A DNA stretch of 64,000 nucleotides from Mobula birostris (taxonomy: Eukaryota), in NCBI RefSeq assembly GCF_030028105.1, contig NC_092377.1, positions 21,448,782-21,512,781 of the forward strand. Reading direction: 5' to 3'. The notes below the pieces were generated by a model. It was not told where the DNA came from. It ran no database searches and was given only the letters and a program-made list of their open reading frames with translations. Made by a program: the position numbers and the translations under genes. Positions 1 to 61,919 of the stretch are shown one piece after another. The stretch's first letter is position 1. Every line of letters begins with the position of its first letter.

Positions 1-711
1 CATCCCTTAGGAAGCATGCGGTAAGGATTTCCTTTTCTAACTCGGACTGATTCTTTTATATCTATAAATTATAAACAGTTTATAGCTGCTTTTGTTAAAA
101 AACGTGTTAAATCTTAAAGACAATGTTGTTATCACTATTATAAAGGCTTTACTGCAAAGATACTTCTTTTACTGACGGGATTTCAATGAACCAAATCATT
201 CAAGAAGAAAACTACAGATGTAACAAATTGAGCAAAAACTGACAAGACTGTGGAAAGATTATTTGAGTGAGCGATGAATGGTTTCGGATATCTTTCTAGA
301 GGACCACAAAATCTTTTACTGGCAATATTAAGATCACAAGCCTTTTCAAAAGCAAACAAATGACATGTTTTCTACTGGAATATTACTGGCTTAAAATTTG
401 ACAAGGAAAATAAGAAATGTAAATACCAAAATAGTTTTATATCTGAACTGGATATATTCTGATAACATCTTTGAACATTTCAAACCTGCAGCAAGACAAA
501 CAACAGTGTAGTAGGAAATGTGCAGAATTTTGCAGTTGTTGTTTTGAAAAGGACTATATATAACGGACAGAGAAAACTGAAGGTGGTAGATAAAAAGGAT
601 CTCCGAAAACGATATCACAAAGCATTTGTTATTGGCGACGATAATAAAGATACTTTAATATAGTTACCTCAGCATACAGTTGTTGGATTAGTGAAATTGT
701 CCAGTAGAAAA

Positions 712-864
712 ATGGGCATCTCTGCCATCACTGAAGCAGAGAAAGTAAGTCTCCAAGGAGAGAAAGAAGACAGAGAGGAGTCTATTCTTGCTCTGCTGGG
801 GATCATAGGAACAATTCTGAATCTTCTAGTGATCATCTTTGTATACATCTATACTACGTTCTGA
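712..864 (+). CDS. TUNAR/megamind-family transmembrane microprotein (50 aa), nested antisense in a BIRC6 intron
   Basis: Manual translation: MGISAITEAEKVSLQGEKEDREESILALLGIIGTILNLLVIIFVYIYTTF*. The ATG is in strong Kozak context (aaaATGG). The C-terminal half is nearly identical to the recalled human TUNAR peptide (...EESVLAMLGIIGTILNLIVIIFVYIYTTL). The BIRC6-intronic antisense position matches zebrafish megamind (linc-birc6). Symbol left blank because this is probably the BIRC6-linked paralog rather than the TUNAR ortholog. Confidence 0.9.
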   Translation: MGISAITEAEKVSLQGEKEDREESILALLGIIGTILNLLVIIFVYIYTTF

Positions 865-926
865 ATGCTCAGAAGCTGATGAAAAGCAACAAACTAGCCC
901 CAAAAGTTCTTCAGAATACTTTCGTA

Positions 927-1030
927 TCATAAGACCATAAGATGCAGGAGCGGAGTTAGGCCATTTGGCCCATCGAGTCTGCTCTGCCATTTGATCATGG
1001 CTGATTTATTTTCCTTTTCAAACCCATAAG
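927..1030 (-). mobile_element. CR1 3' tail remnant
   Basis: cataagaccataaga repeat tail followed by ggccatttggcccatcgagtctgctc; resembles the other CR1 3' ends here (e.g. 32945). Confidence 0.7.
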
Positions 1031-2524
1031 ATGAAGCAATGAAAGGAATACTCAAAAATGCATTATCCGAACCTTGCAAAAACATCAATAATTAAGCAAC
1101 TGATTAAATAACATTGATAATGTGAAACAACTATCTTCAGTCATATCACTGGAATTTTGTTGCGAACTAACAGAACAGATGGGCATAAAACTGAGTGGGT
1201 GGAAGACAATCAAACTGCCAGAAAGGGACTGATGCCTAATATCAGTGAATTACAAATGATTTTACTACAATATTTAAAAATGAATGCAGCTGAAACTTTG
1301 AAAAATACATAGGCATCACAGAGACAATTGTACAAGCTTTTTCCACAATTTATCTGCAATATTTGGATTATCACCTTTCTCATCTGCAAAGCTTTAGAGC
1401 AAAAGCAAAGCAAAATGATTAAATGGCATGAAAGTTGTTCCAAACATTTGTTTTCAAATTATGTAAGATGTTTGTAATTTTTGTCCTAATATGGATACCT
1501 ACAATAATTTTCCCCCATTAATCTTATACAATCTACTGCTTGGAACATGTCTTCTATATTTTGATAAACTGATGGCTGTAATTTGTCACTTGGGACAATT
1601 CAATAAAACTCAGGCGGCTAAATTAGCCAATAACTTCAAAAATGTTAGTAAGTTACATGATTAAGTTTTAAAAGGCATACATTTGGAGATTATACCTCAA
1701 TAAAACAAATATAAATGTTCAGTGTGTCTGTGATCATAAATTAAGGAAAAATCTCATCATCTCTGTGAATGAGACATTCTCTGCAAATGAGATCATTTCT
1801 GCATTTTCAAAAGAAACCATCAAAGGGTATTTCTCAGTGGGGAATAGGATGCTTGAAGAATGAGTGGGATACCTCAATGCTTGATGTTGGGATATTACAT
1901 CTTCTAAGCTAGGGCATTAATTGACTCAAAAGATTTACCCTCATGATAATCTAAGAGGGACTGCAGAATTGGAACAGGAGGTAGATTAGAAAATGTTCAG
2001 AGTTGGAGGACTGGGCAAAGAGCAAGAGGAATATACTAACTACAAGGAAAAATGCACCTACTCTCTGAATGGTGGTGAAACAATAGGAAGCAACATTGAA
2101 AATGTCTTGGAAACTTCAGCAAAGCCACACTGCCCAACCGCTCCAATGCAACAAGATAAAAAAAATTGATATTGACTATTGAGATCTCAGCAGAAAATAT
2201 CAGGATTAAACTGTAGGGTATCCAATTTTGCTCAACTTATACAATGTAATTTGATACACCAGCATGGAATTTTAAAACAAAAGAAAACAGCTATGGAGAT
2301 ATTTGGATAGATGGCTGAAAATCTTGTTAATGATGAAGATTTTAACAATTGTCTTAAAAGTAGAATGTAGAATAGGAGATTTAAGGAAGGAATTCCAGAC
2401 TTTAGGGCTTTGGTAACTTAATGGCAAATAAATGATGAAATTGCTGACTATGTGGCCAAGTTTGCAGACAATATAAAGATAGGCGAAAGGGCAGGTAGTG
2501 TCGAGAAAGCAGAGAGTCTACAGA

Positions 2525-2561
2525 AGTCCTGACGAAGGGTATCGGCCTGAAACGTCGACTG
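2525..2561 (+). ncRNA. Minimal type I hammerhead ribozyme motif, intact core
   Basis: AGUC-CUGACGA-AGG(GUAUCGG)CCU-GAAA-CGUC/GACU: stem I AGUC/GACU, conserved core, palindromic ACGU in place of stem III. Confidence 0.75.
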
Positions 2562-2625
2562 TACCTCTTCCTAGAGATGCTGCCTGGCCTGCTGCGTTCA
2601 CCAGCAACTTTGATGTGTGTTGCTT
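2527..2625 (+). mobile_element. 99-bp Penelope-like terminal-repeat insert with a 13-bp flanking direct repeat
   Basis: gagtctacagaag at 2514-2526 and 2626-2638; the insert matches the repeat that follows the GIY-YIG ORF at 46766-46890. Confidence 0.85.
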
Positions 2626-4716
2626 GAGTCTACAGAAGGACTTATTAAGAGAATGGGCAAAGTGACAAATGGAATACAGTGTAGGGAAGTGTATGGTCAT
2701 GCATTTTAGTAGAAGGAATAAAGGCATAGACTATTTTCTAAACAGAAAGAAAATTCAAAAATCAGAGGTGCAAAGGGCCTTGGGAGTCTTCATGCAGGAT
2801 TCCCTAAAAGTTAGTTTTCAGGTCTAGTTACATTTACCACCAATGTTAGCATTTATTTCAAGAGAACTAAAATATAAAACAAGGATGTCATGCTGAGGCT
2901 TAGTAAGGTATTGGTCAGACCTCACTCAAAGTATTGTGAACGGTTTTGGGCCCCTTATCTAAGAAAAGATATGCTGGCATTGGAGAAGGTCCAGAGGAAG
3001 TCAACGAGAAAGATTCCAGGAATGAAAGGGTTAACCTATGAGGAGTGTTTGATGGCTCCAGTCTTGCACTGAACTTAGAAAAATGAAGGGGAATCTCAGT
3101 GAAACCTACTGAATATTGAAAGGTGTGGATATTGGAGAGGATGTTTTCTATGGTGCGGTGGGGGGGGATGGGGGAGTCTAGAACAAGAGGGCACACCTCA
3201 GAATAGAGGGACATTCTTTTAGAACAGAGATGAGGAGGAATTCCTTTAGCCAGAGGGTAGTAAATCTGTGGAATTCATTGCCACTGAAGGCTTTGGAAGC
3301 CAAGTCATTGAATATATTTAAAGTGGTGGTTGTTAAGTTCTTGATTAGTCAGGGCATCAAAGGTTACCGGGAGAAGGCAAGAGAATAGGGTTGATAAGAA
3401 TAATAAATCAGCCATGATGGAGTGGTGAGCAGACTTGTGGTCTAAATGAGGAGATTTTTTTTTTAAGGAAGGTGTGTGCTTTGAGTGAGCTAGCTCAGTA
3501 AAAACAGGGATGATGGTAAATAAAATATCAAGGTAAGAGTTGGCCCAGACAGCGGAAAGGGAGAGAGCAGCCGCAACAATGACATTTCAAAAAAAGACAA
3601 ACATCAGATATCTGACAGCCTTATAAACTTAATGTAGACTTCAACATTTTCAGTTGATTTTCACTTAGACCACTTTGTGTTTCTAAACATATCGGATCTT
3701 TGGCTTGTACATCAATTGCTTTGTCATTTAATATCTCCTCCAGAACATTAAAAGACCTTCTTGGAATCTTCACACCCTTCCACATTTTCTATATGCCACT
3801 CTAATTTCCAAAAAAAGTAAAATGCTGCAAATTCTGGAAATACGAATTAAAGACAGAAATCTGGGAAATACCAAATGAGTCAGGCAGCATCTGTGAACAG
3901 ATGAGAGTTAATGTTTCCAGTTGAAATATCAACCCATTACATTTTTGTCTTCATTGATCTGGTCTGATCTGCTGACTATTACCTGCATTTTCAGTTCTTC
4001 CTCTGTGGGTGCTTCCTGACCTGAGTTCATTCAGTACCTTCCTGTTGCAAATGTCTGAATATTTCACTTGCATTGGAAAAATTTGAAATTCTTGGTCCAT
4101 TTGATTCATTTTCCAGTAGTGTCATGCTTCACAAGCTTTTCACCACTGTCACCAGCCCCCACCCCCTTCATCTTATTAAAAAAGGAAGATTTGAGATGCT
4201 GGAAATATCAACAAGTGGAACAACATCCGTGAAGGGGGCCATCTTATCTTTTCAACTTGAAGATTTTACAAAGTCTTCATCACTCATCACAATGAAAGGT
4301 TATTAAACAAACACTGACTCATTTCTCTCCACAGGTGCTGCAGGTTATTTCCAGCATTTTCTCATTTAGTTTTATCTTTCTTTTTTTTTTAAATACAAGT
4401 GCTGACATTTGACATTCAGTGCAGGTTATGCAACAAATATGACATATGAAAGCATTTGTATTAAAAAAATTCTCGAAATTTCAAACAGAAATTGTTGGAC
4501 ATACATAAATTAGTCAGGTTTGCCAAGTAAAAAGGCATCAATTCCTCAGGATTTTCCTGAATCCAGTGTTGAAGCAGTACAAATATTAGAAATAGATCCA
4601 TTATGAAAAGGTTTCAAAGTAAAAATTGTATCAATTAAATTCTTAACTGGACATTTAGGAAATGTATAAAGTTGAGAACACAAGAAGTCTCTAATTTGTA
4701 AATATCTAAAAAAAAT

Positions 4717-5840
4717 TTGAGAAACACTCCGTTAGACAAATTTAAAAAAACCTCTGGGAACATGACCTCCAGATTTCAATTGATGAGGATACTTGGAATG
4801 AAAATTTTTTTTAAACTTGTTCACACCTCTTCATTATGTGCACGGCACTCTCTTTTACAATTTAAAGTGGTTCATAGAGCCTATATGACTAAAGATAAGC
4901 TCTCTCGTTTTTACTCAGATTTTTCTCCATACTGTAATAGGTGTAATGTCGAAGAGGCCTCTCTAAATCATATGTTTTGGTCCTGCCCGCGGCTTGATAA
5001 ATTTTGGGAAGAAGTATTTCAAACTTTCTCGGAGCTTTTTAAAGTAAACTTTAAACCCAACCATCTGACTGCCTTGTTTGGCATTGTTGGAGGAAATGAT
5101 TTTACTCTTAAGCCAAATTATTTGTGTATTTTGGCTTTTATTTCTCTTTTAGCCAGAAGAGTTTTGTTGCTGAAATGGGAAGATGCTGCTCCACCTACTC
5201 ATGCCCATTGGTTGATTGACGTTATGTCATGTTTAAATCTGGAGATGATTAGGTGTTCTATTTCTATACCTAAACAAGTATTTTTTCACATTATGGGGAC
5301 CCTAGAACATAGAACCATAGAACATTACAACACAGAAACAGGCCTTTTGGCCCTTCTTGGCTGTGCCGAACCATTTTTTTGCCTAGTCCCACTGACCTGC
5401 ACCTGGACCATATCCCCTCCATACGCCTCTCATCCATATACCTATCCAAGTTTTTCTTTTTTTTTGTAATTTATTTTTTTTTATTGAATTTCATCATCAA
5501 ACATTTCCATAAGATTTATTTCAGATACTGTACATATATAATCACTTCTTGGAACTACTTTCACAATTTTTGATTTGGGCAGCAATGATGATGGCTATTA
5601 TGTTTGAATTTACGACTATGTCAGAGATTTTTTTTCCCTTTTCTTTTAACCAAACAGCTGTTTTTTTTTCTCTCGCTGTTATTCTGTTTTGTTATGGAGT
5701 TTTGATTTTGCTTTAGATTAGAATAAGATATTTTTTCAATATTACGGTTAATTTACGATACATAGTTATGCGGCAATTCAATCTTGTTTCTGTTTCCATA
5801 ATATCATAATGCATTTTGTATTAGTCTATGCAAGTAATTA
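4717..5840 (+). mobile_element. L1-clade LINE 3' fragment (ORF2 C-terminal zinc-binding region plus 3' UTR) with nested inserts at ~5302-5545
   Basis: ORF 4717 contains QFKVVHRAY...CNRC...SLNHMFWSCP (zf-RVT-like) and ends taataaaaatattgaaaaa. An inverted CR1 tail and a T-rich inverted LINE tail interrupt it. Confidence 0.85.
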
Positions 5841-6739
5841 ATAAAAATATTGAAAAAGCAGTACAAACAGCAGAAACATTAACCTTGTATCTTCTCATAA
5901 GAGTGCTGTTTTACAGTACCATAATTTCTGGTTTTTATGTCTGCACATTGGAGTTAGAGCAGAAGAAACGCCTATGGAATATGCCCAAATGGAATTCAGT
6001 AAACTAACCTTCTGTATGCTAAATTCTTAAATATTCCCATGTGAGTTCAAATATGAATAACATTACATCACTATTTAAACAAGGAAGTACCACAAAAATA
6101 ACATTCATGAAAATGATGATTGGCCATTTACAAACAAGATTTTGAATATTCTTTGCAAAATGAACTTTATTGCTAGTCCCTGCAGGAACCACTACAACTG
6201 AATGAAGTACATAAATATTTTATCAGCCAAGGCGATGCATACTTAAAAAGCACAAATCCTTAGCACAGCACGGAGGCTCTAATTAGCTGCTGCTTAGCCA
6301 GTTTTAAAGGGAGGAATGTACTTGTGGACAACTTAACATTTTATACAAGTGTGGAAAACCTACTGGGCATCAGAACCAAGTGAAAACAAGAAAAGATTCA
6401 TGAAAAACAGAGCAGCGCTGTCACACCGAAGAGAAAATCAGTTATAATAAAAGTGATCGACAGATAACTGAATTCTAGTGTCAGCAGCAATACTGCAGAG
6501 GGAAAAGAAGATTATAAAACCTTTCAAAATTCAGTTTTAATTTCTTTCCACCCACAAGCAGAACAAAAAATTCCCAGGAAGATCCCAATGGCTTTGTTGC
6601 AAAATAATACCACCCCTTTGCAATGAGGTGAAACAGGATAAAAGAACACATAAAAGTTATGAGGTACGTGACATTGCTAATTTTATCCCATTTAATTAGA
6701 AAAAATCTAACGATAATATTTCAGTTCCAACTGATTCAA

Positions 6740-7410
6740 CAACTCTTGGTGATTCAAGAATCTTACATCCTGGTAAATTCTGCATCCTCTCTAAAGCTTC
6801 CATATCGCTCCTATAATGAGGTAACCAGAATAGAACACAATACTCCAAGTGTGGTCTCATCAGAGTTTTATAGAGCTGCAACATTACCACGCAGATCATA
6901 AACTCAGTCTCCAGAATAATAAAGGCCAACGCACAATACAGCTTCTTAACCATGCTATGAACTTGCGCGGTAACTTCTAGGGATCTATGGATGTGGACCA
7001 CAAGATTCCCGTTTCCACACTGCTAACAATCCTGCCATTAACCCTGTGCTCTTCCTTCAATTTTAACCTGCTAAAGTGCATCACTTCAGTCTTCTGCATT
7101 GAACTCCATCTGCCACTTCTCAGCCCATCTCTCCATCTTATCAATGTTCTGTTGAAAATCACCACAAACTTCAACACTATCCACACCACTAACTTTTCTG
7201 TGATCCTCAAACTTGCTACCCATCTTTCCGCTTCCTCACCAAATCATTTATGAAAATTGTAAAAAGCAGGGGCCTCAGAATAGAGCCCTGTGGAACACCA
7301 CTGATCACCAATCTCCAGGCAGAATATACTCTATATAGTACCACCCTCTGCCTTCTGTGGGCAAGCCAAATTTGAATCCATACAGTCAAGTTTCCCTGAA
7401 TCATCTTCTG
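6740..7410 (-). mobile_element. CR1 RT fragment
   Basis: [20 protein letters not shown] and LYKTLMRPHLEYCVLFW in the ORF track. Confidence 0.85.
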
Positions 7411-8399
7411 GCTGTTCAATTAAATAATCAATTGACTTTGAAGATTGCTCCAATGCTTTGTTGGACAAGTTTAACATTGAATCTCCTTATTTTTCAAGAT
7501 TTTGTGTGGCTTCAAAGTTAGTCTTATGATAACAAAATCTAAATTCCAAAACTATTGTTATAAACTCAAGCCAAAACCTTGTAGTCAAAAAATCATTGGA
7601 ATTTATAATGTTGCAAGGGTTTTAAAAAACAAATTCCCAATGAGAATACAAAGTAATTATTAAGCATTAATTATCAATTATGCTCAAAAGAGCAAAATGT
7701 TAAGGAGCCTGGCAATATGATATCCTGGCATAACAGTGGCACATCAGTGCCTCAGCAATCCACAGTGCTGACTTCAGCAGCAGATGTGAAAAGATCTGAA
7801 GTGTGACAAATCTGGAATTACGAAAACCCAACATGCATCTGTTGGTGAGCCTTCCCTGGTGGAAAATGTTGACTACCACCAGTAGAGGCATTGATAATTA
7901 CATGTTCTCCAAGGCCTGTGCCAAATTCACATGTATAAATTAGCAAGAATGTTTTGAGATTAATTATCTAGACATTCCATCCTAAACCATCAGGTGATCT
8001 TTCAGCCCGAATTGGTCATTAGTGAATACTTTAAAAAAATCTCAACTCAAGGTCAATGCCATGTAATCCTTCAGCACTTCATTAAAGGGTCTTTGAGTAT
8101 TTAAGCTCTGAATAATATGATGTGCAACTACTCATCAGGCTGTTGATGAGTAGGAAAAGCATGCTGGATTACTTCAACATGTATACCTACAATTTGAAGT
8201 GCCTGGCAGAGACATTCCATTCTCGTGAAAAAGCCAGAGAAAAGCCATATTTACCAGAGAAGCAAGTGTTTAACAGGAAGGAACTGAAGGCAGCAAGTTT
8301 TAGTTTGAAAAAAAAAACTGGAAAACTAAAGACCCCCTATGTTCTCCATCTTAATATTTTGAAAGATAATGACTAAGAACATTTTTCTTCTCATTTTTC

Positions 8400-9120
8400 A
8401 AGGTTCTGTAAATTTTGGAAGTGACTGTGGGTTGTAGGGTGGCAAATGTGACCTTACTACTTAAGAAGCAAGGGAGAGAGAAAACAGGGAATCACTGACC
8501 TGGTAGTTTAACATTAGTAGGAGGGAAGACAATGAGTGAAGGACATCACAGCAGAAAATCCTGCAAATCATAAGTTTGAGCAGATTCAGCACAAAGATGA
8601 GAGGAGAAATCATGCTTGACTAATTCACTGCAGTTATTTAAGGACATATGCTTGCACTGTGTCCTTTGTAGAACAAATGAAAAGCCAATGGATGCAGTGT
8701 ATTTGGATTTTGACGAGTCTGATGGTGAGTTACCATAAGACTGACTGAGTAAACTAGGCTGTATGTATTCCAGATGATTGAAGAGAACTCCCACTGAATA
8801 TACAAAGTTCTTAAAGACAGAGAATGGATGCAGCATGGATTTGTTTTAGCAGAGGAGTGTCAAATAAGATATCATCTGACAATAAAGGATAGGCAATTTA
8901 GGAGAGACAAGGAGAAATTTCTTTAGCAGAGGTGGTAAATGAGAATTCAACCAAGGAGGATTGTGAAAGTTTGGTCAGACTTCATGCAAAATGGGGATTT
9001 GTGGATGTTAAGGCGACATAAGGTACGAAGATAACACCTTGACAGAAGATCATTTATCATCTTGATGAATACTGGAGTATGCTTTAAGGTGAGCGAGTTA
9101 TTTCTGGTGACTGCTTCCAA
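8400..9120 (+). mobile_element. Old, highly degraded CR1 fragment
   Basis: DWRVANVT.L.KK-like, KSCLTN and AVYLDF-like remnants. Confidence 0.55.
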
Positions 9121-9164
9121 CATTGTCATGTAAATGTTCTGAAACAAGAAACTGCTGTGATGAG

Positions 9165-9495
9165 GACATTCTCAGGTTGGAGGAGCAACACCTTATATTT
9201 CCTCTTGAAAGTCTCTAAATTGATAGCATGGACATCGATTTCTCTTCCTCCCCCCTTCTCTCATTTTCTATTCTCCATCCTGACTCCCCTCTTACCCCTT
9301 TTTCTCACCTTTCTCTGATGCCCCCCCTCCTTCCTTTCTTCCATGGTCCACTATCCTCTATCAGATTCTATCTACCCCCCTCCCACCTTCTTCCTACTTC
9401 ATTTCCAGTCCTGATGAAGGGTCCTGGACCAACATGTCAACTGTTTATTCCCCTCCACAGATCCTGCTGAGTTCCTCCAACATTTTATGCATGTT
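9165..9495 (+). mobile_element. Penelope-like 3' end with degenerate hammerhead at 9406-9443
   Basis: ggaggagcaacaccttatatt, a pyrimidine tract, then cagtc-ctgatga-aggg...aactg. Confidence 0.75.
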
Positions 9496-10799
9496 ATTTA
9501 AAAGAAATACTGGCCAAGAAGTTATTTGCAAAACAGAAAACAAAAAACAAACATATCCATTTTATCCAAGGTTATTTAAACTGCAGATCAAATTCATCAA
9601 ACGCAATCCTGATTAGCAACCAGGACAAACCTCATGGACTCTGCAAAATAAGAGGTCATGTGCTTGTTATTTTAGTGACTTATTTAAATAATGTACAACT
9701 TTCAAACAATTCAGATTATTTAATACCTTCATGGCAAATTGGCCTAAATAAGTATTGTTTAAAAAAAGTGTTGGAAATACTCAGCAGGACAAGATACAAC
9801 TGAACCATTAAATTTGTTCCTCTTCCTACAGACGAGTCCTGACGTGTTCATTATTTCTAGCATTTTCTGTTTTTCAGCATGTGTCAGCACGTGCTTCTTT
9901 TATGTTTAAACATTGTTAAAATACTAGTTGTATTTCACAGATGGTTCTTTAGAAATTGACGTAGCAAAGCTATTTACAATAACCAAAGGACACTCTGCTA
10001 ATGTTTCAAATTAATCTTGTAGTACCTTCAGCATATCAACAATGACTTGATTAAATCTGTAACTGTATCTAAATTGGATATTCTACTACAGGTTTTCAGG
10101 CTGCACTGAAGAGCAAATTAAGATATAAAAGTGACTGTGTGTATAAAACAGTCTGTAATACCCAATACAAATGAGGAACTCTCTTTAAAATGAGCAATTT
10201 TAAAAGTAAAATGTCAGGGGACAGATTCTTTAAAATAACTTTTTAATCCATTGGTTGACAAGGAACTTTACAAAAATCCACAGTGAGAAACTCCTACTCT
10301 TAATTTGGCAAAGATCACTGATGAAAACTATTTTAAAGATTGAGTAAGTGCAAGCCCAGTGGAAACCAGTGTTGCATATAACTTGCTGTACACACAGATG
10401 TTGAGAAATTTTGCATGCAAAGGACAACCTTGGGCATGAGCTACCTCAGTGAATCTCTAAAGCTCAAAAGACTAAGGTGTTTAAGAAGCAAATTGCCGTC
10501 AGAAGAAGATATGTATGATATTAAAAGTACAGAAAGAACACAACATTCACGAGTAGACTGAATTTAAATTTGAAAGGCTACTTAATGTACAACAAGATTC
10601 TGAAATAGGAGGGGCCAGGTAACGAAAATCCAAAATCCAGGATAAAACTGATGGCAAGTAATTATGAGTATTAGCATTATATATCAGACCATAACAAAAT
10701 GAAAACAAAAGCAGAGAAGAGGTGGGGATATTAGGGTGGTAAGAGCAAGGAATAGACTGCAGCAGCCAAAGATGGTAGCAACAAGATAAGAGACAACAA

Positions 10800-11170
10800 A
10801 AACACGAGGAATTCTGCAGATGCTGGAAATTCAAGCAACACACATCAAAGTTGCTGGTGAATGCAGCAGGCCAGGCAGCATTTCTAGGAAGAGGTACAGT
10901 CAACGTTTTGGGCCGAGACCCTTCGTCAGGACTAACTGAAGGAAGAGCTAGTAAGAGATTTGAAAGGGGGAGGGGGAGATCCAAAATGATAGGAGAAGAC
11001 AGGAGGGGGAGGGATGGAGCCAAGAGCTGGACAAGTGATTGGCAAAGGGGATATGAGAGGATCATGGGACAGGAGGCCCAGGGAAAAAGAAAAGGGGGAG
11101 GGAGGGAAAAACCCAGAGGATGGGCAAGGGGTATAGTCAGAGGGACAGAGGGAGAAAAAGGAGACAGAGA
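10800..11170 (-). mobile_element. Penelope-like terminal repeat with mutated hammerhead at 10897-10934
   Basis: Same family as 2527 and 13598. On the minus strand it reads agtc-ctgacga-agggtctcggccc-aaaa-cgtt-gactg (GAAA>AAAA, GUC>GUU). Confidence 0.85.
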
Positions 11171-11419
11171 TAACAACACTGCATTTACTGATATAGTAGT
11201 GACAGAAGAGGAGATTATGGCTGGATGGAGACTGCATTGTTAAAGAAAATGCAATCTTACTTTTCAGACATGGGTATTACTGGAAAGGTCACCATTTACT
11301 AGCACAGCAGTGATGGTAAACTAATTTCTTAAGCAGCAGCAATACTGCTAGTGAAGGTACTTCCACACTGCTGTTGCATAGGGTGTTCTAGAGTGTATAG
11401 ATTCAGCCGCATAAAGTAG

Positions 11420-11688
11420 TGGCGGCACACTAGTGTAATGATTAGCACAACCCTTTACAGTACCAATGACATGGGTTCAATTCCCATCGCTGTCTGTAAG
11501 GAGCTTGTATGTTCTCCCCATGGCTATGGAGGTTTCCTCTGGGTGCTCCGATTTCCTCCATCGGCCCAAGGACGGCTAATTGGTCTGTACGTTGTCCCAC
11601 GATTAGGGTCGAGGTAAATCAGGGGCTGCTGGGCGGCTAGGCTTGAAGGGCTGAAACAGCCTATTCCACACTGTACCTCAACAAATAA
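11420..11688 (+). mobile_element. tRNA-derived V-SINE (HE1-like)
   Basis: A-box-like tagtgtaatgatt, B-box ggttcaattcc, V-domain-like gttctcccc...ggtttcctctgggtgctccgatttcctcc, and an aataaa tail. Confidence 0.75.
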
Positions 11689-11809
11689 AGTGGCACATAT
11701 CTCCACATCAGAGTGGAGAGCAATGTGAGTGGGAATCCCTGGTATTCCTAATCACCAGATTTGGTTCTTCTTGGCTTTTAAATTGCTGCAAGATCAGTCC
11801 AGACTCATC

Positions 11810-12612
11810 TAAATATACCCTATTTTTTTCTCCCCCAGAAACCTAGGGTGTACACCATTTAGTCCAGGTGACTTATCTAACTTCAGAACTTTCAGTTTCC
11901 TAAGAATCTTCTCCCTAGTTATGTAATGTCAAGCAACACACACAAAATGCTGGAGGAAGTCAGCAGGCCGGGCTGCATCTATGGAAAAGAGTACAGACGA
12001 CGATTTGGGACAAAGGGTTTCTGCCCTTCTGCCATCATCCTTGCCAGTGTTCTTTTCCAATCAATTCTGGCCAACTCCTCTCTCATGCCTCTGCAATTTC
12101 CTTTACTTCACTACAATACTGATACGACTTCAGCATCTCCTTTTCAAAATTCAGGGTGAATTTGATATTATGATCACTTGCCCCCAAGGGTTCTTTGATC
12201 TTAGCACTCTAATCAATTCCAGTTCATTGCACAACACCCAATCCTCCAGTGGACTCAACCATGAGCTATTCTAAAAAGCCATCTTGTAAGCACTCCAGAA
12301 AATTTCCCCTCTTGGAATGCAGCAGCAACCTGATTTTCCCCAATCAACCTGCATATTGAAATCCCCCATGACTATTGTAACGTTGATCTTTTGGCATGCA
12401 TTTTCTATCTCCCATTGTAATTTGTAGACCACATCCTTACTGCTTGGGGGTCTGCATACCACTCCCATCAGGGTCTTTTAACCCTTGCAGTTCCTTAGCT
12501 CTATCCACAATGATTCAACATCTTCCAACCCTATGTCTCCTCATGATAATGATTTGATAGCATTTTTTACCAACAGTAATGCCACTCCCTCTGCCTTCCT
12601 GCCTGTCTTTAT
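11810..12612 (-). mobile_element. CR1 endonuclease-region fragment, with a short Penelope repeat at ~11928-12012
   Basis: GVVCRPP...IVMGDFNMQVDW (APE domain). Confidence 0.8.
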
Positions 12613-13597
12613 TAATAAGGCTCTTTTACTTTTCCAGTACATTAGCAATAACTGTACTAATTATACATGTGTACAGGCAACAGTACCAGATATGCCAGAA
12701 TACATTGCAAGAGAATAATAAAACCAGAAGCGTAAACATACACTGCATAAAGAGGAAAGCACCAAATACCATCACGTAGTATTAAGAAACAGAAATGGCA
12801 TACTTAACAAGTCTAAAAAAAACTTTTACAGAAATTGATACACAAAATGACTTCCTAAGTATATTAAGTCTGCTCAATGTTGCATTACCCTAATATAATC
12901 AGTTCTTTGATCTAAAATCTGATTGAGAAAAGATCAAAATACATTGTATTTTGGCAACTATCTGTAAGGTAGAACTACTGTAATGTCTCTCATAAAGTTC
13001 CATTTTCTTGTTCCCTATCAATCGGATCGAGTTCTCAGTATTCTCAAGAGGGAAGGTGAGCAGCCAGATGTCATGGTCCATGTAGGGACCAATGATGTGG
13101 ATAGGAAGGAGGAGGAGGTCCTACAAAGAGAGTTTAGGGAGTTAGGTGCAAAGTTGAAGGACAGGACCTCCAGGGTTGCAATCTCAGGATTGCTACCCAT
13201 GCCACGTGCTAGTGAGGCTAGAAATAGGAAGATAATGCAGCTAAGTACATGGCTAAGGAGTTGGTGCAGGAGGGAGGGCTTCATGTTTCTGGACAATTGG
13301 GCCCTGTTCCATGGAAGGTGGGACCTGTTCCGACAGGATGGGTTGCACCAGAACTGGAGGGGGACTAACATCCTTGTGGGAATGTTTGCTAGTGCTGCTC
13401 CGGGGAGGGTAAAACTAGATTTGCAGGAGGAGGGGAACCAGAGTGTTAGAGCAGATAGTGAGGTGGAGGAGGATAAAGGTCATGCGAGAACTGCAAGTAT
13501 AGACAGAAATCAAAGGTTTGTACGAGATAGAAATGTTCTCAGGTGCATCTACTTCAATGCAAGGAGTATTGTAGGTAAGGCAGATGAGCTCAGGACA

Positions 13598-13730
13598 AAC
13601 AACAGGAATTCTGCAGATGCTGGAAATTCAAGCAACACACATCAAAGTTGCTGGTGAACGCAGCAGGCCAGGTAGCATCTGTAGGAAGAGGTGCAGTCGA
13701 CGTTTCAGGCCGAGACCCTTCGTCAGGACC
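13598..13730 (-). mobile_element. Short Penelope-like terminal-repeat insert in the CR1 ORF2 start
   Basis: Interrupts KADELRT|WIS; aggaca flanks both sides (13592-13597 and 13733-13738). Confidence 0.85.
13695..13730 (-). ncRNA. Minimal type I hammerhead ribozyme motif, intact core
   Basis: Minus strand: GGUC-CUGACGA-AGG(GUCUCGG)CCU-GAAA-CGUC/GACU. Confidence 0.75.
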
Positions 13731-16700
13731 AGAGGACATGGATTAGCATGTGGGATTAGGACATTATTGCTATTACTAAGACTTGGTTACAGGAAGGGCA
13801 GAACTAGCAGCTTAATGTTCCGGGGTTCTGTTGTTTCAGACGTGACAGAGGGGAAGAGATGAAAGGGGGAGGAGTGGCATTACTAGTCAGGGAGAATATC
13901 ACAGCTGTGCGAAGGCAGGACAGCACGAAGGGCTCGTCTACAGAGGCCATATGGGTAGAGCTGAGGAATGGGAAAGGTGTGACCACACTAATAGGGTTGT
14001 ATTATAGACCACCTAATAGCTAGAGAGAATTGGAGGAGCAAGTCTGTAGAGAGATAGCAGACCGATGAAAGAAACAGAAAGTTGTAACTTTCCACATATT
14101 GACTGGGAATCCCACACTGTGAAAGGGCTGGATGACTTGGAGTTTGTCAAATGTGTTCAGGAAAGTTTTCTAAATCAAAATATAGAGGTACCAACGAGAG
14201 AGGATGCAACACTTGATCTCCTATTAGGGAACCAGACAGGTCAGGTGTCAGAAGTATGTGTGGGCGAACATTTTGGGTCCAGTGACCATAATGTCATTAG
14301 TTTCAAGTTAATTATGGATAAAGGTAGATCTGGGTCTTCGAGTTGAGGTTCTAAATTGGAGAAAGGCCAATTTTGTGATAAGAAAGGATCTAGGAAGAGT
14401 GGATTGGGACAAGTTGTTTTCTGGCAAAGATGTGTTCAGTAAGTGGAAGGCCTTCAAAGGCGAAATTTTGAGAGTGCAGAGTTTGCATGTTCTTGCCAAG
14501 ATTAAAGGCAAGGTTAATAGGCATAGGGAACCTTGGTTTTAAAGGGATATTCGCAATCTGGTTAAGAAAAAGAGGTGGAAAGCAGGTAAGGCAATTAGGA
14601 ACAAATGAGGTACTTGAAGAGTATAGAAAATGTAAGAAAATACTAAAGGAGAAAATCAGGAAGGCAAAAAGAAGATATGAGGTTGCTTTAGCAGATAATG
14701 TGAAGGTAAACCTAAAGGATTTCTACAAGTATACTAAAAAGAGAGTAAGGGAGAAAATTGGTCCTCCAGAAGATCAGAGTGGTCGTCTATGTGTGGAGCC
14801 TCAGGAGATGGGGGAGATCTTAAAGAGTATTTTTTCATCAGTATTTACTCAGGAAACTGGCAGAGTGTATATGGAAGGAAGGGAAACAATCAGTAGTGTC
14901 ATGAAACATATAGAGATTAAAGAGGAGAAGGTGCTTGCTGCCTCACAGTGAATAAAGGTAGATAAATCCCCCGGGCCTGACAGGATATTTCCTCGGACAT
15001 TGAGAGAGACTAGTGTAGAAATTGCAGGGGCCCTGGCAGAAATATTTAAAATGTCCTTAGCCACCCACGTGGTGCTGGAGGACTGGAGGGTGGCTCATGT
15101 TGTTCCGTTGTTTAAAACAGGCTCTAAAAGTAAACCAAGCACTTACAGACTGGTGAGCCTAACATCAGTAGTAAGTAAATTATTGGAAGGTGTTCTGAGA
15201 GATCGGATATACAAGTATTTGGACAGTCAGAGGCTGATTCGGGATAGTCAGCATGGCTTTGTGTGTGGTAGATCATGTTTAACGAATCTTGTAGAGTTTT
15301 TTGAGGAGGTTACCAAGAAAGTAGATGAGGGAAAGGCTATGGATGTTGTCCACGTGGATTTTAGTAAAGCCTTTGACAAGGTCCCACATGGGAGGTTAGT
15401 TCAGAAAGTTCAGACACGAGGTATCCATAGAGAGGTTGTAAACTGGATTCGAAATTGGCTGCGTGGGAGAAGACAGAGAGTGGTAGTGGATGATTGCTCA
15501 TCAGACTGGAGGCCTGTGACTACTGGTGTGCCTCAGGGATCTGTGCTGGGACCGTCGTTGTTTGTTGTCTATATCAATGATCTAGATGAAAATGTGGAAA
15601 ACTGGATCAGCAAGTTTGTTGATGACACTAAGATTGGAGGTGTTGTGGACAGCGAGGAAGGCTTTCAAAGCTTGCAGAGGGATCTGGACCAGCTGGAAAA
15701 ATGGGCTAGAAAATGGCAGATGGAAATTAATGCAGACAAGTGTGAGGTGTTGCATTTTGGAAGGACAAATCAAGGTAGGACATACACAGTAAATGGTAGG
15801 GCACTGAGGAGTGCGGAGAAACAAAGGGATCTGGGAGTTCAGATACATAATTCCCTGAAAAGTGGCGTCACAGGTGGACAGGGTGGTAAAGAAGGCTTTT
15901 GGCATCTTGGCATTCATAAATCAAAGTACTGAGTATAGGAGTTGGGATGTTATGGCGAAGTTGTTTAAGACATTGGTGAGGCCAAATTTGGAATATTGTG
16001 TGCAGTTCTGGTCACCTAACTATAGGAAGGATATCAGTAAGATTGAAAGTGTGCAGAGGAGATTTACTAGGATGTTGCGGGTCTTCAGGAGTTGAGTTAC
16101 AAGGAAAGATTGAACAGGTTAGGACTTCATTCCTTGGAGCGTAGAAGAATGAGGGGAGATTTGACAGAGGTTTACAAAATAATGAGGGGTATAGACAGAG
16201 TAAATGCGAGTAGGCTCTTTCACTTAGATTAGGAGAGATAAACACACGAGGACATGGCTTTACGGTGAAAGGAGAAAGATTTAGCAGGAATATTAGAGGG
16301 AACTTCACTCAGAGAGTGGTGGGAGTGTGGAACGAGCTGCCATCTGACGCGGTAAATGCGAGCTCACTCAAGTTTTAAGAACAAATTGGATAAATACATG
16401 GATGGGAGAGGTCTCCAGGGTTATGGACTGGGTGCAGGTCAATGGGACCAGCAGAATAAAGTTTCAGCACAGACTAGAAAGGCCGAATGGCCTGTTTTCT
16501 GTGCTGTAGTGTTCTATGGTTCTATCAAATTATTCCAGGCAGCCGAGTTATTAAAAAATAATACCTCACATCCTCCTTCACTCCAAAGAGAAAAGCCATA
16601 GCTCACTCAACCTATCCTCATAATATCACTAAACTACAAAAATTATATATTAAAAATTTTAGAATTTTACTACACCTGCCTATAGTACATGATTCTATTC

Positions 16701-16864
16701 ACATTTGCAGCTGCCCCTTTTAAAGTTTTATGGACTGCTAGAAAAAGCTTTTAATGAAGAATAAGCCAAGTTTTTGAGCTTTTACTGCTCCCCGCATTGA
16801 TTAGCTGACCTCTATTATAATTTAACAGTAAATTAAAATGTAAAATTAATTTAAAACAGTAGAT

Positions 16865-17335
16865 AGAATCACATTTGGAGTATTGTGTTCAGTCCTGGTT
16901 GCCTCATTTTAGGGAGGATGGTGAAAACTCTCGATGAGGTACAGATGAGATTTAGCAAGAGGCTGCCAGGATTCAAGAGAATATCTTAGGAAGATAGGTT
17001 GAGTGAGCTAGGACTTTTCTTTTTAGAGTGAAGGGGGATGAGAGGTGACTTGATTGAGATGTACAAGATGATAAGCAGCAGAGATAGAGTGGACAGCTGG
17101 ATACTTTTCCCAGGGTCAAAATGGCTGATACTAAGAGGTATAACTTTAAGGCAATTAGAAGAAAGTATGGGGGAATGACAGAGGTAGTGTTTTTTTTTTA
17201 AATACATAGAGTGGTAGGTGCATGGATTACACTGCCAGGGTGGTGTTAGAGCCAAGTACATTAGGGACATTTAAGACACTCTTAGATGGGCACTCAGATG
17301 AAAGAAAAATGGAGGCCTGTATTGTTCTATGCTCT
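16865..17335 (+). mobile_element. CR1 3' fragment
   Basis: HLEYCVQSW, RGDLIEMYK and a ttctatgctcta tail. Confidence 0.8.
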
Positions 17336-18989
17336 AGAAACACAAATCAGTATGGTTGACAGGGAAAGAGATCGCCTTTGACTCAACTGCAACAGACTGA
17401 GCTCTTAGTTCACTGCAGTCAATAAAAATTAAAGAAAGATCGTTCATCAACTAGTGAAAAAGATATTATTTGATCTTAGTACTGGGTATCTTCCAAATTT
17501 GCAGCAAAGTATACTGAACTTTGATTTATCTGTTGTATATAATGCTAATTGAAAATATTTATCTTTTCAATGACATATAAAATTGGACAAGCTATTTTAA
17601 AGTTAATGCCTGTAATCCACAGAAACACCAACTTCAGCATGGCCTACTCCACTTCCATGCTCTATTTCACCATGTTTGCATCGAATCAAAATGAAATGAG
17701 TTATAATAAAGAGAGATTTTCTTCCTTACCCAGATGAATTATAATTTCTGAAGTTAATCTCATCTCAAACCAGTTCTAAAATGGTTATGTACTATTGCAA
17801 AATTTGGAAGGAATTAATTTCCTAACCAAGAACAAACTTATATTTATGCCAAATTATTCAAAATGTGCATACATGTCCTTCACTATACAATATTCATCAA
17901 TTTATAATGTTGACTGTAGAAACACAATTAAAACCAAACTATTACATTTCCTGCAAAATGTTATTAAATAGGATATACCTGAAATAAGATATAGTGAGAC
18001 TCTCTTATTTAGGGTACATTTAGGTTTTCGAAGAGTTCGTCAGGGACAAAAAAATCTTGCTATGTCTCTGGCACTCCAACACTATCTTTTACAATTGCTT
18101 AATGTTTTGACAGAAAAATTTTTAATACTTATTTTCTGCCTGTAGGATAAAAACAACATTTTGCACAGTGCTGTCAACTGAAAAATATAATGGCTTTGAA
18201 GCATTAGTTGAATATCTTCTCGTTTTAACACTGCTGCCTAATTTGAGTTTACAGCATCTTGCTTCCAGAATATTTATACATTATTAAATCAGTTTACCAC
18301 AAAACTAGAAAACATGCAAGCTGACTGCAAAAAGAAAGATCACAATAAATAGCTGATTTTACTCAATGTGATGACCTGACAGGTCTGCAACACCTTCCGC
18401 ACCCACCATGGCATTGTCACTTACCTGTGAAATTGCAAGCTTCTACTTACATTCTACAATGGAATTATTAATTGTACAATCTCATGTTGGTGAAAAGAAC
18501 TATAATTTGTGACGCAGAACATGGTTTACTATTTATTTAGTCTGTTTCAATTTACCCACCTAAAGTGGACTGCAAAATCTGTGCACAATAAACTGCATTA
18601 TAGCCTTGCTCGCATCATGTTAAATGGTAGGTTCAAAAGAGAGCATTATTCCATGACAAAATGTTTTCTCAACAAAATGAATCAATGTAATGACAATTAA
18701 ATCAAATTAAAACTCTACAGTTCTACTTTGTGCTTTGCATTTTCTTGATAACCACTACCACTCTGAAGAAACTAATCATAATTCAGCCAATATAAAAAAA
18801 GTTGTAAAAATTTATATCCTTAATATTCAAAGCTTCAGTTTTAAAAGTCTATTTGTTCACTGGGTCCGCTGGCATTACCAACATTTGTTGTCCATCCCCA
18901 TTTGCTTCTGAAATGAGCACTTAAAAGTCAACCATATTGGTGTTTGAAGACACATACAAGCCAGATTGCATAAAGACAATGATTCTTTA

Positions 18990-19455
18990 GATCATAGAAT
19001 GTTACAGCACAGGAACAGTCCCTGCAGCTCACAATGCCAGTCATGGATTTCCCAACCATACCCTACCCTGACTTTTAAATGCTGCTATCTTATCTGTGAC
19101 CATCACCTCACCAGACAGCATATTTCAAACACCTACCATTCTCTCCGTAAGAAAGGTTGTTATGAAAATCTTATTTAAATTTTCTCCCTCTGACCATAAA
19201 CCTATGCCTTGTAGAATTTGACATTTCAACCCATAGAAAAGGGTCTGATGCTGCAGAGAAAACTATCCAGCTTTGCCCAACCTCTCCTTATAGTTAATAC
19301 TCAAATCCAGGCAACATCCTGGTGAACCTCTTCTGCACCTTCTCCAAACCTCCATATCCTACCTGTAGATCAATGGGTAGAACTTCATATACTAAACTAA
19401 ATGTGGCCCAATCAGAGTTTTATAAAGCGGCAGCTTGACTTCCCACCTTTTATAG
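18990..19455 (-). mobile_element. CR1 3' fragment
   Basis: Inverted catagaa tail and RT C-terminal remnants (ccaggcaacatcctggtgaacctcttctgcacc). Confidence 0.7.
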
Positions 19456-19713
19456 GAAATGCAACAGTAAAGTAGTAGTTCTGCAAAGATGCTGGAAATT
19501 TTGTGGTTACCAATATCTGATTATCTTCTCTTACGTAATAATTTTAAATTAAATTCCACAGTTGCCTTTGTACGGTTCAAAGCTGGGTCTCTAGAACAAT
19601 GGTCTGGTACTCTAGATGTTAGTCCAGTGACAATAACATTAAGCAACAATATCCTAAACTAATGACATAAAAAGCACTTTCATTGCTAAAAATGTAACTT
19701 TACAGTTACATAC

Positions 19714-19879
19714 CCGAGTCATTCCTCAGATAGGATGACATGGCAGGAATAAGACAGGATTGGCTGAGCAGCTCCACAAGTACAGAGGGAAGAGCATTAT
19801 TATTCTGTCCTCGACTTTCACCAGGGTTTAGATCTCCAGATAAACTGCTGCCTCCAGGATTTATGTAACTAGCAAGAAC
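19714..19879 (-). CDS. BIRC6: BIRC6 coding exon (VLASYINP...SYLRNDS), 166 nt; last BIRC6 exon found in the window
   Basis: gttctag|GTT ... TCG G|gtatgt; NALPSVLVELLSQSCLIPAMSSYLRNDS. The expected next exon (VLDMARHVPLY..., recalled) was not found in 1-19713. Confidence 0.96.
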
Positions 19880-61631: not shown

Positions 61632-61919
61632 TAAATCACTAATACTTATAATCCTGGCTAAGGCATGGAAAATTGACAGAAATAGGCTCTAACATGAATA
61701 TCACTTACACCAAAACGTTTAGAACAAGATAGGGTGGGAAAGTATCTTCTTCTCATCCCTGGGGAAAATTTCACATTAAGCAATGCATAAAAAGTTGCAA
61801 ATAGATTGAAAAGTTGGTCCATAACTCTAATTCAGTCATATGCAATTTATGTGCTTCAGACAAAGTTTCAGCTCTCAACTAAGTGTAGCAAACAATTCAA
61901 TATACTTTGTTGACATTAC

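What the first reader, a model, noticed from the sequence alone, without database searches (positions are those of the whole stretch)
712..864. Hidden TUNAR/megamind-family microprotein gene nested antisense in a BIRC6 intron
Seen: a 50-codon ORF missed by the ORF track, with a strong Kozak context, an acidic N-terminus and a ~23-residue hydrophobic C-terminal helix (ILALLGIIGTILNLLVIIFVYIY), i.e. a tail-anchored topology. It lies in the >19.7-kb intron after the BIRC6 ...YLRNDS exon, on the opposite strand. Established (recalled): zebrafish megamind/linc-birc6 was described as a brain lncRNA in a birc6 intron, and mammalian TUNAR encodes a 48-aa peptide (pTUNAR/BNLN) reported to regulate SERCA-dependent ER calcium. 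Inference: the BIRC6-linked copy is an intact protein-coding gene in a probable cartilaginous fish. That would date the nested arrangement and the peptide to at least the jawed-vertebrate ancestor, and the locus is likely unannotated or mis-annotated as lncRNA. The N-terminus (MGISAITEAEKVSLQG) diverges from TUNAR while the helix is almost invariant, suggesting a distinct paralog.
Basis: partly seen in the sequence, partly recalled or inferred. Interest (0 to 1): 0.9.

Follow-up and report, generated by a model that had tools for sequence, protein, structure and literature searches.

The report
Shark TUNAR-like microprotein gene inside BIRC6
A real, conserved 50-amino-acid membrane microprotein gene of the TUNAR family lies backwards inside an intron of the BIRC6 gene of a shark-like fish, and it belongs to a little-noticed sister branch of TUNAR, not to TUNAR itself.

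Summary
The ORF at 712-864 (+) exists as described. ORFs of this length are common here, so homology is the evidence. It matches Pfam TUNAR (PF21954) at E=1.3e-19. It is 90% identical over all 50 residues to NCBI-annotated 'protein TUNAR(-like)' of two sharks. Against a bird-type and a teleost-type copy, differences fall at codon positions 1/2/3 as 10/7/31 and 13/8/35, so the peptide is under selection. BIRC6 runs on the minus strand. Its C-terminal exons were not found left of 19.7 kb, so the gene sits antisense in a BIRC6 intron.

The peptide belongs to a 'TUNAR-like' branch ('group C', my label). This branch occurs in sharks, ray-finned fishes, amphibians, squamates and a bird, beside TUNAR proper in the same genomes. 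No paper held uses the term 'TUNAR-like'.

It is a new member of a known family, and two other sharks already have it annotated.

The scan's notes hold no earlier TUNAR finding.

The parts
712..864 (+). Coding sequence of the 50-aa TUNAR-like microprotein (short isoform) with its TGA stop
   Evidence: Searches show the ORF. One search gives Pfam PF21954 at E=1.3e-19. One search gives 90% identity to shark 'protein TUNAR(-like)'. One search shows a codon-position pattern of purifying selection.
784..852 (+). Codons 25-47, the hydrophobic C-terminal membrane helix (ILALLGIIGTILNLLVIIFVYIY); only three residues (TTF) follow it
   Evidence: One search shows hydropathy peaking at residues 25-43. 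One search gives a helix with pLDDT 88-97. One search finds 17 invariant columns across 31 family members, 13 of them in the helix and its C-terminal flank. One search finds 0 second-position changes in this half against the L001 and L002 copies.
673..711 (+). In-frame open stretch (HTVVGLVKLSSRK) between the putative acceptor and the ATG. It matches the exon-2 part of the N-terminal extension of the 67-68-aa shark isoforms.
   Evidence: Searches show the shark extension MKCG(Q)TA.GLLLK.FTT. One search shows the tblastn match of P0001 starting at 688. One search shows the frame open back to the TAG at 661. The upstream exon was not found in the window.
664..672 (+). Putative 3' splice acceptor (ttacctcag|) about 40 nt upstream of the ATG
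   Evidence: One search aligns it with ...ttcttctag| in L002 and ...ttattacag| in L001. One search shows S. torazame isoforms X1 and X2 differing by one Q at this point. Searches give the literature: the last acceptor is conserved, and the sORF lies at the start of the last exon. There are no RNA data here, so this part is inferred.
19714..19879 (-). BIRC6 exon encoding VLASYINP...YLRNDS (human BIRC6 residues 4328-4383 of chain 8atm_A), with acceptor ...ttctag| and donor G|GTATGT
   Evidence: E=5.8e-18 to BIRC6 structures; the sequence.
61911..62723 (-). Large BIRC6 exon (human residues 3523-3788). It fixes the gene's orientation as minus.
   Evidence: E=1.4e-125.
1..19713 (-). Part of the BIRC6 intron that hosts the microprotein gene. 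The intron runs off the left end of the window.
   Evidence: One search finds no E2 active-site motif in the window. One search finds 0 of 148 minus-strand open segments of 34 aa or more matching UQ_con or BIRC6 families. About 476 BIRC6 residues remain to be encoded after the exon at 19714.

Best explanation
Window 712-864 (+) is the coding exon of a functional protein-coding gene for a 50-aa single-helix membrane microprotein of the TUNAR family. It belongs to the 'TUNAR-like' paralogue group, which I call group C. The gene lies antisense inside an intron of BIRC6, after the exon that ends ...YLRNDS.

Shown here: the homology, protein-level purifying selection, the paralogue assignment, and the BIRC6 orientation and position.

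Inferred: the ORF starts the last exon, about 40 nt after a conserved splice acceptor. A longer isoform of roughly 65 aa may begin in an upstream exon left of the window.

Inferred from mammalian pTUNAR/BNLN: the peptide is too short for co-translational targeting, so its C-terminal helix inserts post-translationally into the ER membrane, with the acidic N-terminus in the cytosol. The helix is 22 of 26 residues identical to a TUNAR-proper (group A) representative. It would bind a SERCA calcium pump and tune ER/cytosolic calcium in neurons and endocrine cells.
For: Family membership:
- Pfam TUNAR E=1.3e-19, 70.3 bits against a cut-off of 27.
- All 30 of 30 hits in the 5.8-billion-protein search carry PF21954. 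The top three are shark proteins at 90% identity over 100% of the query.
- 111 representatives reach E<=1e-3 among 1.84 billion; 6 of the top 7 are group C.

Coding signature:
- Against bird-type L002, differences at codon positions 1/2/3 are 10/7/31, with 37 of 50 residues identical, pS 0.78 and pN 0.18.
- Against teleost-type L001 they are 13/8/35, with pS 0.98 and pN 0.19.
- In the helix half there are 0 second-position and 17-19 third-position changes in 26 codons.
- Similarity decays after the stop codon, and an acceptor aligns upstream.

Paralogue assignment:
- N-terminal motifs (MG.SAIT..E.V, LLK.F..KM) are shared with bird, squamate, amphibian and sturgeon group C, not with group A or B.
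- On 66 residues, a starred split (95/81) puts the sharks with group C against A+B.
- Groups A and C coexist in Pituophis, Vipera, Pelodytes, Dallia and Knipowitschia. Groups B and C coexist in Huso and Xenopus laevis.

Host gene.

Structure: one helix, pLDDT 88-97 over residues 21-50.

Function of the family: passages of PMC8758570 (ER, SERCA2) and of bioRxiv 10.1101/2020.05.12.091728 (ER, SERCA3).

Weak hint of expression: three small runs of 119-241 million letters, guessed to be RNA, hold 66%, 32% and 27% of the sampled words of 560-1000.
Against: - The runs are only guessed to be RNA and could be DNA or capture libraries.
- On the last 50 residues alone, the best tree puts the sharks beside group B with weak support (77/34). 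The acidic motif EDREE resembles group B. The AU tests for shark+C and shark+A did not finish.
- The window row in the 66-residue tree uses 13 inferred residues upstream of the ATG.
- Nesting rests on not finding BIRC6 3' exons in 1-19713. Exons shorter than 34 open codons, or outside Pfam domains, would be missed.
- No function has been tested for any group C protein. The two papers on group A disagree on whether SERCA is activated or inhibited.
Confidence: 0.85

Rival explanations
1. It is simply the shark orthologue of TUNAR proper (group A), with a lineage-specific N-terminus and no separate paralogue.
For: NCBI names the S. torazame protein 'protein TUNAR'. The helix is 82% identical over 34 residues to a 48-aa group A protein. 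No group A or B protein from a cartilaginous fish was recognised in my searches, so sharks might have only one gene.
Against: The N-terminus and the upstream extension match group C position by position, not group A. A starred split (95/81) puts the sharks with C against A+B. Groups A and C are separate genes in the same genomes.
Confidence: 0.08
2. The conserved element acts only as RNA, as the lncRNA megamind/TUNA was first described, and the ORF is incidental.
For: The locus family was first published as lncRNA, with morpholino and rescue phenotypes (review passages). A dual RNA and protein role is not excluded (passage of PMC6886504).
Against: Third codon positions are saturated while second positions in the helix never change between shark, bird-type and teleost-type copies. 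The frame, length and stop are kept across about 240 family members. Similarity ends at the stop codon. The zebrafish morpholino phenotypes were later attributed to off-target effects (passages).
Confidence: 0.03
3. The ORF is intact but silent in this species: a recently inactivated or unexpressed copy.
For: No RNA evidence could be obtained. The upstream exon of the long isoform was not found in the 711 bases available. The exact peptide is not in the 15-billion-protein collection.
Against: The ORF is full length with a strong start context. It differs from two other sharks at only 5 of 50 residues, all conservative in the helix. Small runs hold up to 66% of the words of the exon.
Confidence: 0.06
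4. The gene lies just downstream of BIRC6 (convergent, tail to tail), not inside an intron.
For: Only exons up to human residue 4383 were located. Small exons could hide in 865-19713 (one search covers only open segments of 34 aa or more).
Against: About 476 residues, including the UBC domain, remain to be encoded. There is no E2 active-site motif anywhere in the window, and 0 of 148 segments hit UQ_con or BIRC6 families. By my reading, the open minus-strand segments of 50 aa or more in 865-19713 look like repeats or low-complexity sequence. The only Pfam hints there are two weak LINE-type matches.
Confidence: 0.04

Closest known systems
pTUNAR / BNLN, the 48-aa peptide of mammalian TUNAR (group A)
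   Same: It is in the same Pfam family. Both have a short acidic N-terminus and a C-terminal helix ending ...FVYIYTT. The window peptide is 28 of 34 residues identical to a 48-aa group A protein. In both, the sORF lies at the start of the last exon, with a possible longer isoform of about 65 aa (passages). In mammals the peptide localises to the ER and binds SERCA.
   Different: The N-terminus differs: MGISAITEAE.V against MVITSGNEE.. The sequences fall on different sides of a starred split. The host locus here is a BIRC6 intron. The function of group C is untested.
NCBI 'protein TUNAR-like' / 'protein TUNAR' of Cetorhinus maximus and Scyliorhinus torazame (P0001-P0003)
   Same: They are 90% identical over all 50 residues, with the same C-terminal TTF and the same extension frame. 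They are the presumed orthologues.
   Different: They are annotated as 67-68 aa from an upstream exon (MKCG...) that is not in the window. Their genomic context could not be fetched.
Zebrafish megamind / linc-birc6
   Same: Passages describe it as a 3.2-kb gene antisense in an intron of birc6, with its last acceptor conserved across gnathostomes (PMC3668355; PMC4408788). That is the arrangement seen here.
   Different: It was published as a lncRNA and is equated in the literature with TUNAR. I had no zebrafish sequence, so I cannot say which paralogue group it belongs to.
Regulins and DWORF (phospholamban, sarcolipin, myoregulin and others): micropeptide regulators of SERCA
   Same: They are single-helix micropeptides under 60 aa in the ER/SR membrane that act on SERCA through the membrane helix. 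This is the likely mode of action.
   Different: pTUNAR lacks the xLFxxF motif shared by regulins and has no sequence similarity to them or to DWORF (passage of PMC8758570). The window helix also has no LF..F (read).

Membership tests
TUNAR family (Pfam PF21954) | Match to the family profile above its curated cut-off | tested here: met
   70.3 bits against a cut-off of 27, E=1.3e-19, residues 17-49 on profile positions 15-47 of 48.
TUNAR family (Pfam PF21954) | A peptide of about 48-50 aa with an acidic segment (E..EE) and then one C-terminal hydrophobic helix ending FVY.YT | tested here: met
   17 invariant columns in 31 members; helix 4-49.
TUNAR family (Pfam PF21954) | Selection acts on the peptide, not only on the RNA | tested here: met
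   Codon-position differences are 10/7/31 and 13/8/35, with pN 0.18-0.19 against pS 0.78-0.98. Only two distant copies were compared. No shark or ray DNA was available.
TUNAR family (Pfam PF21954) | ORF at the start of the last exon, behind a conserved acceptor | tested here: inconclusive
   An AG with a pyrimidine run aligns in the window, L001 and L002. No RNA reads are available.
TUNAR family (Pfam PF21954) | ER membrane localisation and SERCA binding | not testable with these tools
   Known only for mammalian group A.
TUNAR proper (orthologue of human TUNAR, my group A) | N-terminal MV(I/N)T... and a KESKEE-type acidic motif | tested here: not met
   The window has MGISAIT... and EKEDREES.
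TUNAR proper (orthologue of human TUNAR, my group A) | Groups with group A in a family tree | tested here: not met
   A starred split (95/81) separates sharks+C from A+B on 66 residues. On 50 residues the placement is unresolved.
TUNAR-like paralogue (my group C) | Shared N-terminal motifs MG/V.SAIT..E.V(K/R) and the extension ..LLK.F..KM | tested here: met
   (37 of 49 residues identical to finch P0240 over the whole peptide).
TUNAR-like paralogue (my group C) | Helix variant NLFVIVF, typical of bony-vertebrate group C | tested here: not met
   The sharks have NLLVIIF, as in groups A and B. I read this as the retained ancestral state, but it is what pulls the sharks towards group B.
megamind / linc-birc6 arrangement | Antisense within an intron of BIRC6 | tested here: met
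   Literature passages.
megamind / linc-birc6 arrangement | Sequence orthology to the zebrafish birc6-hosted gene | not testable with these tools
   No zebrafish locus was available.
Regulins (PLN/SLN/MLN/ELN/ALN) | xLFxxF motif in the membrane helix | tested here: not met
   No LF..F occurs in ILALLGIIGTILNLLVIIFVYIYTTF. The same is stated for pTUNAR.

The most novel reading that the evidence does not exclude
The vertebrate TUNAR family consists of at least three old paralogue groups. The copy nested antisense in BIRC6 is group C ('TUNAR-like'). Under this reading it kept its place since before sharks and bony vertebrates split. It survives in sharks, ray-finned fishes, amphibians, squamates and birds, and is missing or decayed in mammals.

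If so, zebrafish megamind (linc-birc6) would be the group C gene. The widely repeated equation 'megamind = TUNAR' would then be a paralogue mix-up. That would bear on how cross-species rescue and knockout results are read, because paralogues could compensate for one another.
Probability: 0.35. Interest if true: 0.6.

Novelty: new member of a known kind. Interest (0 to 1): 0.45.

Why it matters
TUNAR/megamind is a standard example both of a 'conserved lncRNA' and of a lncRNA that turned out to encode a microprotein. This locus shows that a sister gene of TUNAR is protein-coding and under strong selection in a cartilaginous fish. It sits in the same host-gene arrangement reported for zebrafish megamind.

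The family has at least three paralogue groups in jawed vertebrates plus lamprey relatives. The papers I could search do not mention this: 'TUNAR-like' occurs in 0 papers, and none of the 15 listed of 109 papers holding 'TUNAR' and 'paralog' concerns TUNAR paralogues by title or abstract.

Redundant paralogues could explain why the zebrafish megamind deletion mutant showed no phenotype (passages). They also give three natural variants of one SERCA-binding helix to compare. For annotation, such 50-codon genes inside introns of large genes are still called unevenly. Only two cartilaginous-fish species appeared among the named hits.

Tried and rejected

One metagenome scan gave two host-derived contigs, L001 (3.3 kb, teleost-type) and L002 (8.3 kb, bird-type). 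Neither holds a recognisable BIRC6 exon: four window exons searched one by one by local tblastn gave no hit, and I recognised none by eye in the open minus-strand segments. The contigs are too short for this to count against nesting.

Papers. Ulitsky 2011 (PMC3376356) and Lin 2014 (PMC4010157) are not held. 'BIRC6-AS2' occurs in one unrelated paper. My recollection that HGNC lists 'megamind' as an alias of human BIRC6-AS2 therefore has no support from any call. The searches were badly framed and gave nothing useful. I did not ask for supplements. The 88-species alignment in the BNLN supplement and the megamind sequence in Ulitsky's supplement could settle which fish genes were treated as TUNAR orthologues.

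Trees. On the last 50 residues (117 rows quick; 109 rows careful) the sharks' nearest rows by path are group C. The best careful tree nevertheless joins them to group B at 77/34. The AU tests for shark+C and shark+A did not finish in the time limit and give no result. For one search I dropped 8 long-branch or duplicate-like rows. For one search I chose 49 rows that carry the N-terminal extension out of about 240 sequences.

Other blanks. The protein atlas gave only a generic 'protein TUNAR' cluster by structure, with no taxa of use. Rfam at gathering scores found nothing in 1-5400. There is no second TUNAR-like ORF in the window (local tblastn). P0248, a 585-aa member of the P0162 cluster, is an unrelated prokaryote-like protein and was ignored. 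The GTAAGT inside the ORF (746-751) reads as the codons for V-S. At this position the other sharks have V-R, so I take it as chance and not a used donor.

Full report
**1. The observation**

The plus strand carries ATG at 712 and TGA at 862-864, enclosing 50 codons. The start context is AGAAAAATGG, with A at -3 and G at +4. AlphaFold2, given a 31-sequence family alignment, predicts one helix over residues 4-49. Its pLDDT is 88-97 over residues 21-50 and 52-56 over residues 1-20. An ORF of this size is ordinary: the window has 165 ATG-ORFs of 50 aa or more. The case therefore rests on homology.

**2. Family**

The peptide matches Pfam TUNAR (PF21954) at E=1.3e-19 and 70.3 bits, against a cut-off of 27. 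In the 5.8-billion-protein collection, 30 of 30 candidates pass E<=0.01 and all carry PF21954. The three best are NCBI models from sharks: 'protein TUNAR-like isoform X2' of Cetorhinus maximus and 'protein TUNAR isoform X1/X2' of Scyliorhinus torazame. They are 90% identical over the whole query, which fits a cartilaginous-fish source. The exact peptide was not returned, so it is not in that collection. An exhaustive HMMER scan of 1.84 billion representatives found 111 proteins at E<=1e-3.

**3. Coding or RNA?**

One metagenome scan returned two host-derived contigs with related ORFs. L002 encodes a peptide identical to the last 50 residues of the finch protein P0240. L001 encodes a percomorph-type peptide.

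| Comparison | Differences at codon positions 1/2/3 | pS | pN |
|---|---|---|---|
| Window against L002 (bird-type) | 10/7/31 | 0.78 | 0.18 |
| Window against L001 (teleost-type) | 13/8/35 | 0.98 | 0.19 |

Against L002, 37 of 50 residues are identical. In the 26 codons of the helix half there are no second-position changes and 17-19 third-position changes, with 22 of 26 residues identical. The DNA alignment keeps an AG acceptor about 40 nt upstream of the ATG in all three sequences and loses similarity after the stop. This is the signature of selection on the peptide. It agrees with passages stating that the TUNAR sORF lies at the start of the last exon and that megamind's last acceptor is conserved across gnathostomes.

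**4. Gene structure (inferred)**

The frame is open from 664 to the ATG, with a TAG at 661. The stretch HTVVGLVKLSSRK after the AG at 671-672 parallels the extension of the 67-68-aa shark isoforms, (Q)TA.GLLLK.FTT.M. The two S. torazame isoforms differ by one Q exactly there, as expected of a tandem acceptor. The first coding exon (MKCG in the sharks) was not found in bases 1-660 and probably lies left of the window. A long isoform of about 65 aa beside the short one is also discussed for mammalian TUNAR (passage). Candidate poly(A) signals start at 1103. None of this could be checked against reads.

**5. Host gene**

Two exons were searched separately against solved structures.

| Window position | Human BIRC6 residues | E-value |
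|---|---|---|
| 61911-62723 (-) | 3523-3788 | 1.4e-125 |
| 19714-19879 (-) | 4328-4383 | 5.8e-18 |

The exon at 19714-19879 has a textbook acceptor and a G|GTATGT donor. BIRC6 therefore runs right to left. About 476 residues, including the UBC domain, must be encoded further left.

No E2 active-site motif occurs anywhere in the window. None of the 148 minus-strand open segments of 34 aa or more in 1-19708 matches UQ_con or a BIRC6 family. Only weak LINE-type hits appear, with best E values of 0.0014 and 0.0018. The ORF is thus inside the BIRC6 transcription unit, on the opposite strand, in an intron longer than 19.7 kb. Other BIRC6-like open frames at about 24.5, 31.9, 34.4, 37.0, 40.6, 45.7, 47.8, 50.1 and 59.9 kb were seen but not searched. 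The spliced BIRC6 model was not joined or searched as a whole.

**6. Which TUNAR?**

The family sequences fall into three groups by my own motif sorting of 236 sequences: 100 in group A, 33 in group B, 84 in group C, 4 shark rows (the window included) and 15 others.

- **Group A** is TUNAR proper (MV(I/N)T...KESKEES..LNL.VIIFVYIYTTL).
- **Group B** has ..DREER..LNLLVVIF...TTI.
- **Group C** has MG/V.(S/T).IT..E(E/D)V(K/R)..KEE.EES..LNLFVIVF...TTL.

Names from cluster look-ups and search listings give the following distribution:

- **Group C:** sharks, sturgeons, eels and other teleosts, amphibians (Bombina, Lissotriton, Pelodytes, Xenopus laevis, Anomaloglossus), squamates (Anolis, Pituophis, Naja, Vipera) and a bird (Chloebia).
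- **Group B:** Huso, X. laevis, Gekko, Lerista, cyprinids and gadids.
- **Lampreys:** more distant relatives.
- **Mammals:** none of the named group C proteins is mammalian.

Groups A and C occur together in Pituophis, Vipera, Pelodytes, Dallia and Knipowitschia, so they are separate genes.

The window peptide shares group C's N-terminus and extension: LLK.F..KMG.SAIT.AE.V. It is 37 of 49 residues identical to the finch protein along its whole length. The matches to group A (28 of 34) and group B (21 of 25) cover only the C-terminal part. A careful tree of 49 chosen rows over 66 residues has a starred split (95/81). It puts the three shark rows and 17 group C rows, plus one lamprey, against 14 group A and 13 group B rows plus the other lamprey.

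Against this reading, the 50-residue tree joins the sharks to group B weakly (77/34), and the AU tests did not finish. The shark helix (NLLVIIF) and EDREE motif look like groups A and B. I read these as retained ancestral states.

**7. How it probably works**

The function is inferred from group A. Passages of PMC8758570 report that pTUNAR is an ER membrane protein that co-precipitates with SERCA2 and speeds cytosolic calcium clearance. Passages of bioRxiv 10.1101/2020.05.12.091728 report that BNLN binds SERCA3 and lowers ER calcium. The two papers differ on the direction of the effect.

A 50-residue peptide with its only hydrophobic segment at the C-terminus leaves the ribosome before it can be targeted co-translationally. 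A tail-anchor-like, post-translational insertion with the acidic N-terminus in the cytosol is therefore the likely topology; this is inference. The membrane helix is the part conserved between paralogues, so a SERCA-type partner is the best guess for group C as well. I put this at about 0.5. The helix lacks the regulin xLFxxF motif, so it would work like a regulin without being one.

**8. What is known and what is new**

Already known: the family, its peptide, its Pfam entry, NCBI's 'TUNAR-like' models in two sharks, and zebrafish megamind's position antisense in a birc6 intron. The locus is therefore a new member of a known kind.

What I could not find in the searchable papers is any account of TUNAR paralogues. 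'TUNAR-like' occurs in 0 papers. 'TUNAR' with 'paralog' occurs in 109 papers; by title and abstract, none of the 15 listed treats the subject. Every passage I read equates megamind with TUNAR.

Because the shark gene in the BIRC6 intron is group C, the birc6-hosted zebrafish gene may be group C too. I could not test this. No named cypriniform group C protein appeared, which either argues against it or reflects annotation of that locus as non-coding.

**9. Limits**

- There are no reads for this locus and no genomic context for any relative.
- The two founding papers are not held, and supplements were not consulted.
- The run listing offers only a hint of expression. Three small runs, guessed to be RNA, hold 27-66% of the sampled words of 560-1000. 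That would be unlikely for low-coverage DNA of a large genome, but it is also compatible with capture libraries.

Noticed in passing
Rfam at gathering scores found no family match anywhere in 1-5400. I did not try the more permissive E-value mode.
   Followed up: partly
window 6699-7419, 12274-12477, 29857-30622 and 33019-33803 (minus-strand open frames): These open frames look like reverse-transcriptase or endonuclease remnants of LINE-type retrotransposons in BIRC6 introns. Among the 148 segments of 1-19708, one matched RVT_1 (E=0.0018) and one matched Exo_endo_phos_2 (E=0.0014).
   Followed up: partly
window 746-751: A perfect donor-like AAG|GTAAGT lies inside the ORF, at codons 11-13 (K-V-S). 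The other sharks have V-R at this position, so it is probably a chance product of the S codon and not a used splice site.
   Followed up: partly
proteins P0032 and P0138 (not in the window): P0032 (263 aa) holds two TUNAR-like helices in one predicted protein. The second resembles the divergent 46-aa P0138. This hints at tandem group B copies in some fish, or at a fused gene model.
   Followed up: no
proteins P0126 (Petromyzon marinus) and P0134 (Lampetra fluviatilis): Lampreys carry TUNAR-family relatives. The family therefore predates the split of jawed vertebrates and lampreys. Their placement in the trees is unstable because of long branches.
   Followed up: partly
proteins P0037, P0091, P0107, P0195 and P0201 (Logan assemblies, organism unknown): These are divergent group C-like peptides with unusual changes in the otherwise fixed helix, for example ...VFVYICTTL and ...VFMYIYTIF. 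They may be fast-evolving or decaying copies in an unidentified lineage.
   Followed up: no
L002 1-8347 (contig Ga0181612_135143) and L001 1-3255 (contig MDSQ01046324.1): Metagenome contigs carry vertebrate host DNA with intact group C ORFs: bird-type at L002 2395-2547 and teleost-type at L001 2807-2956.
   Followed up: partly
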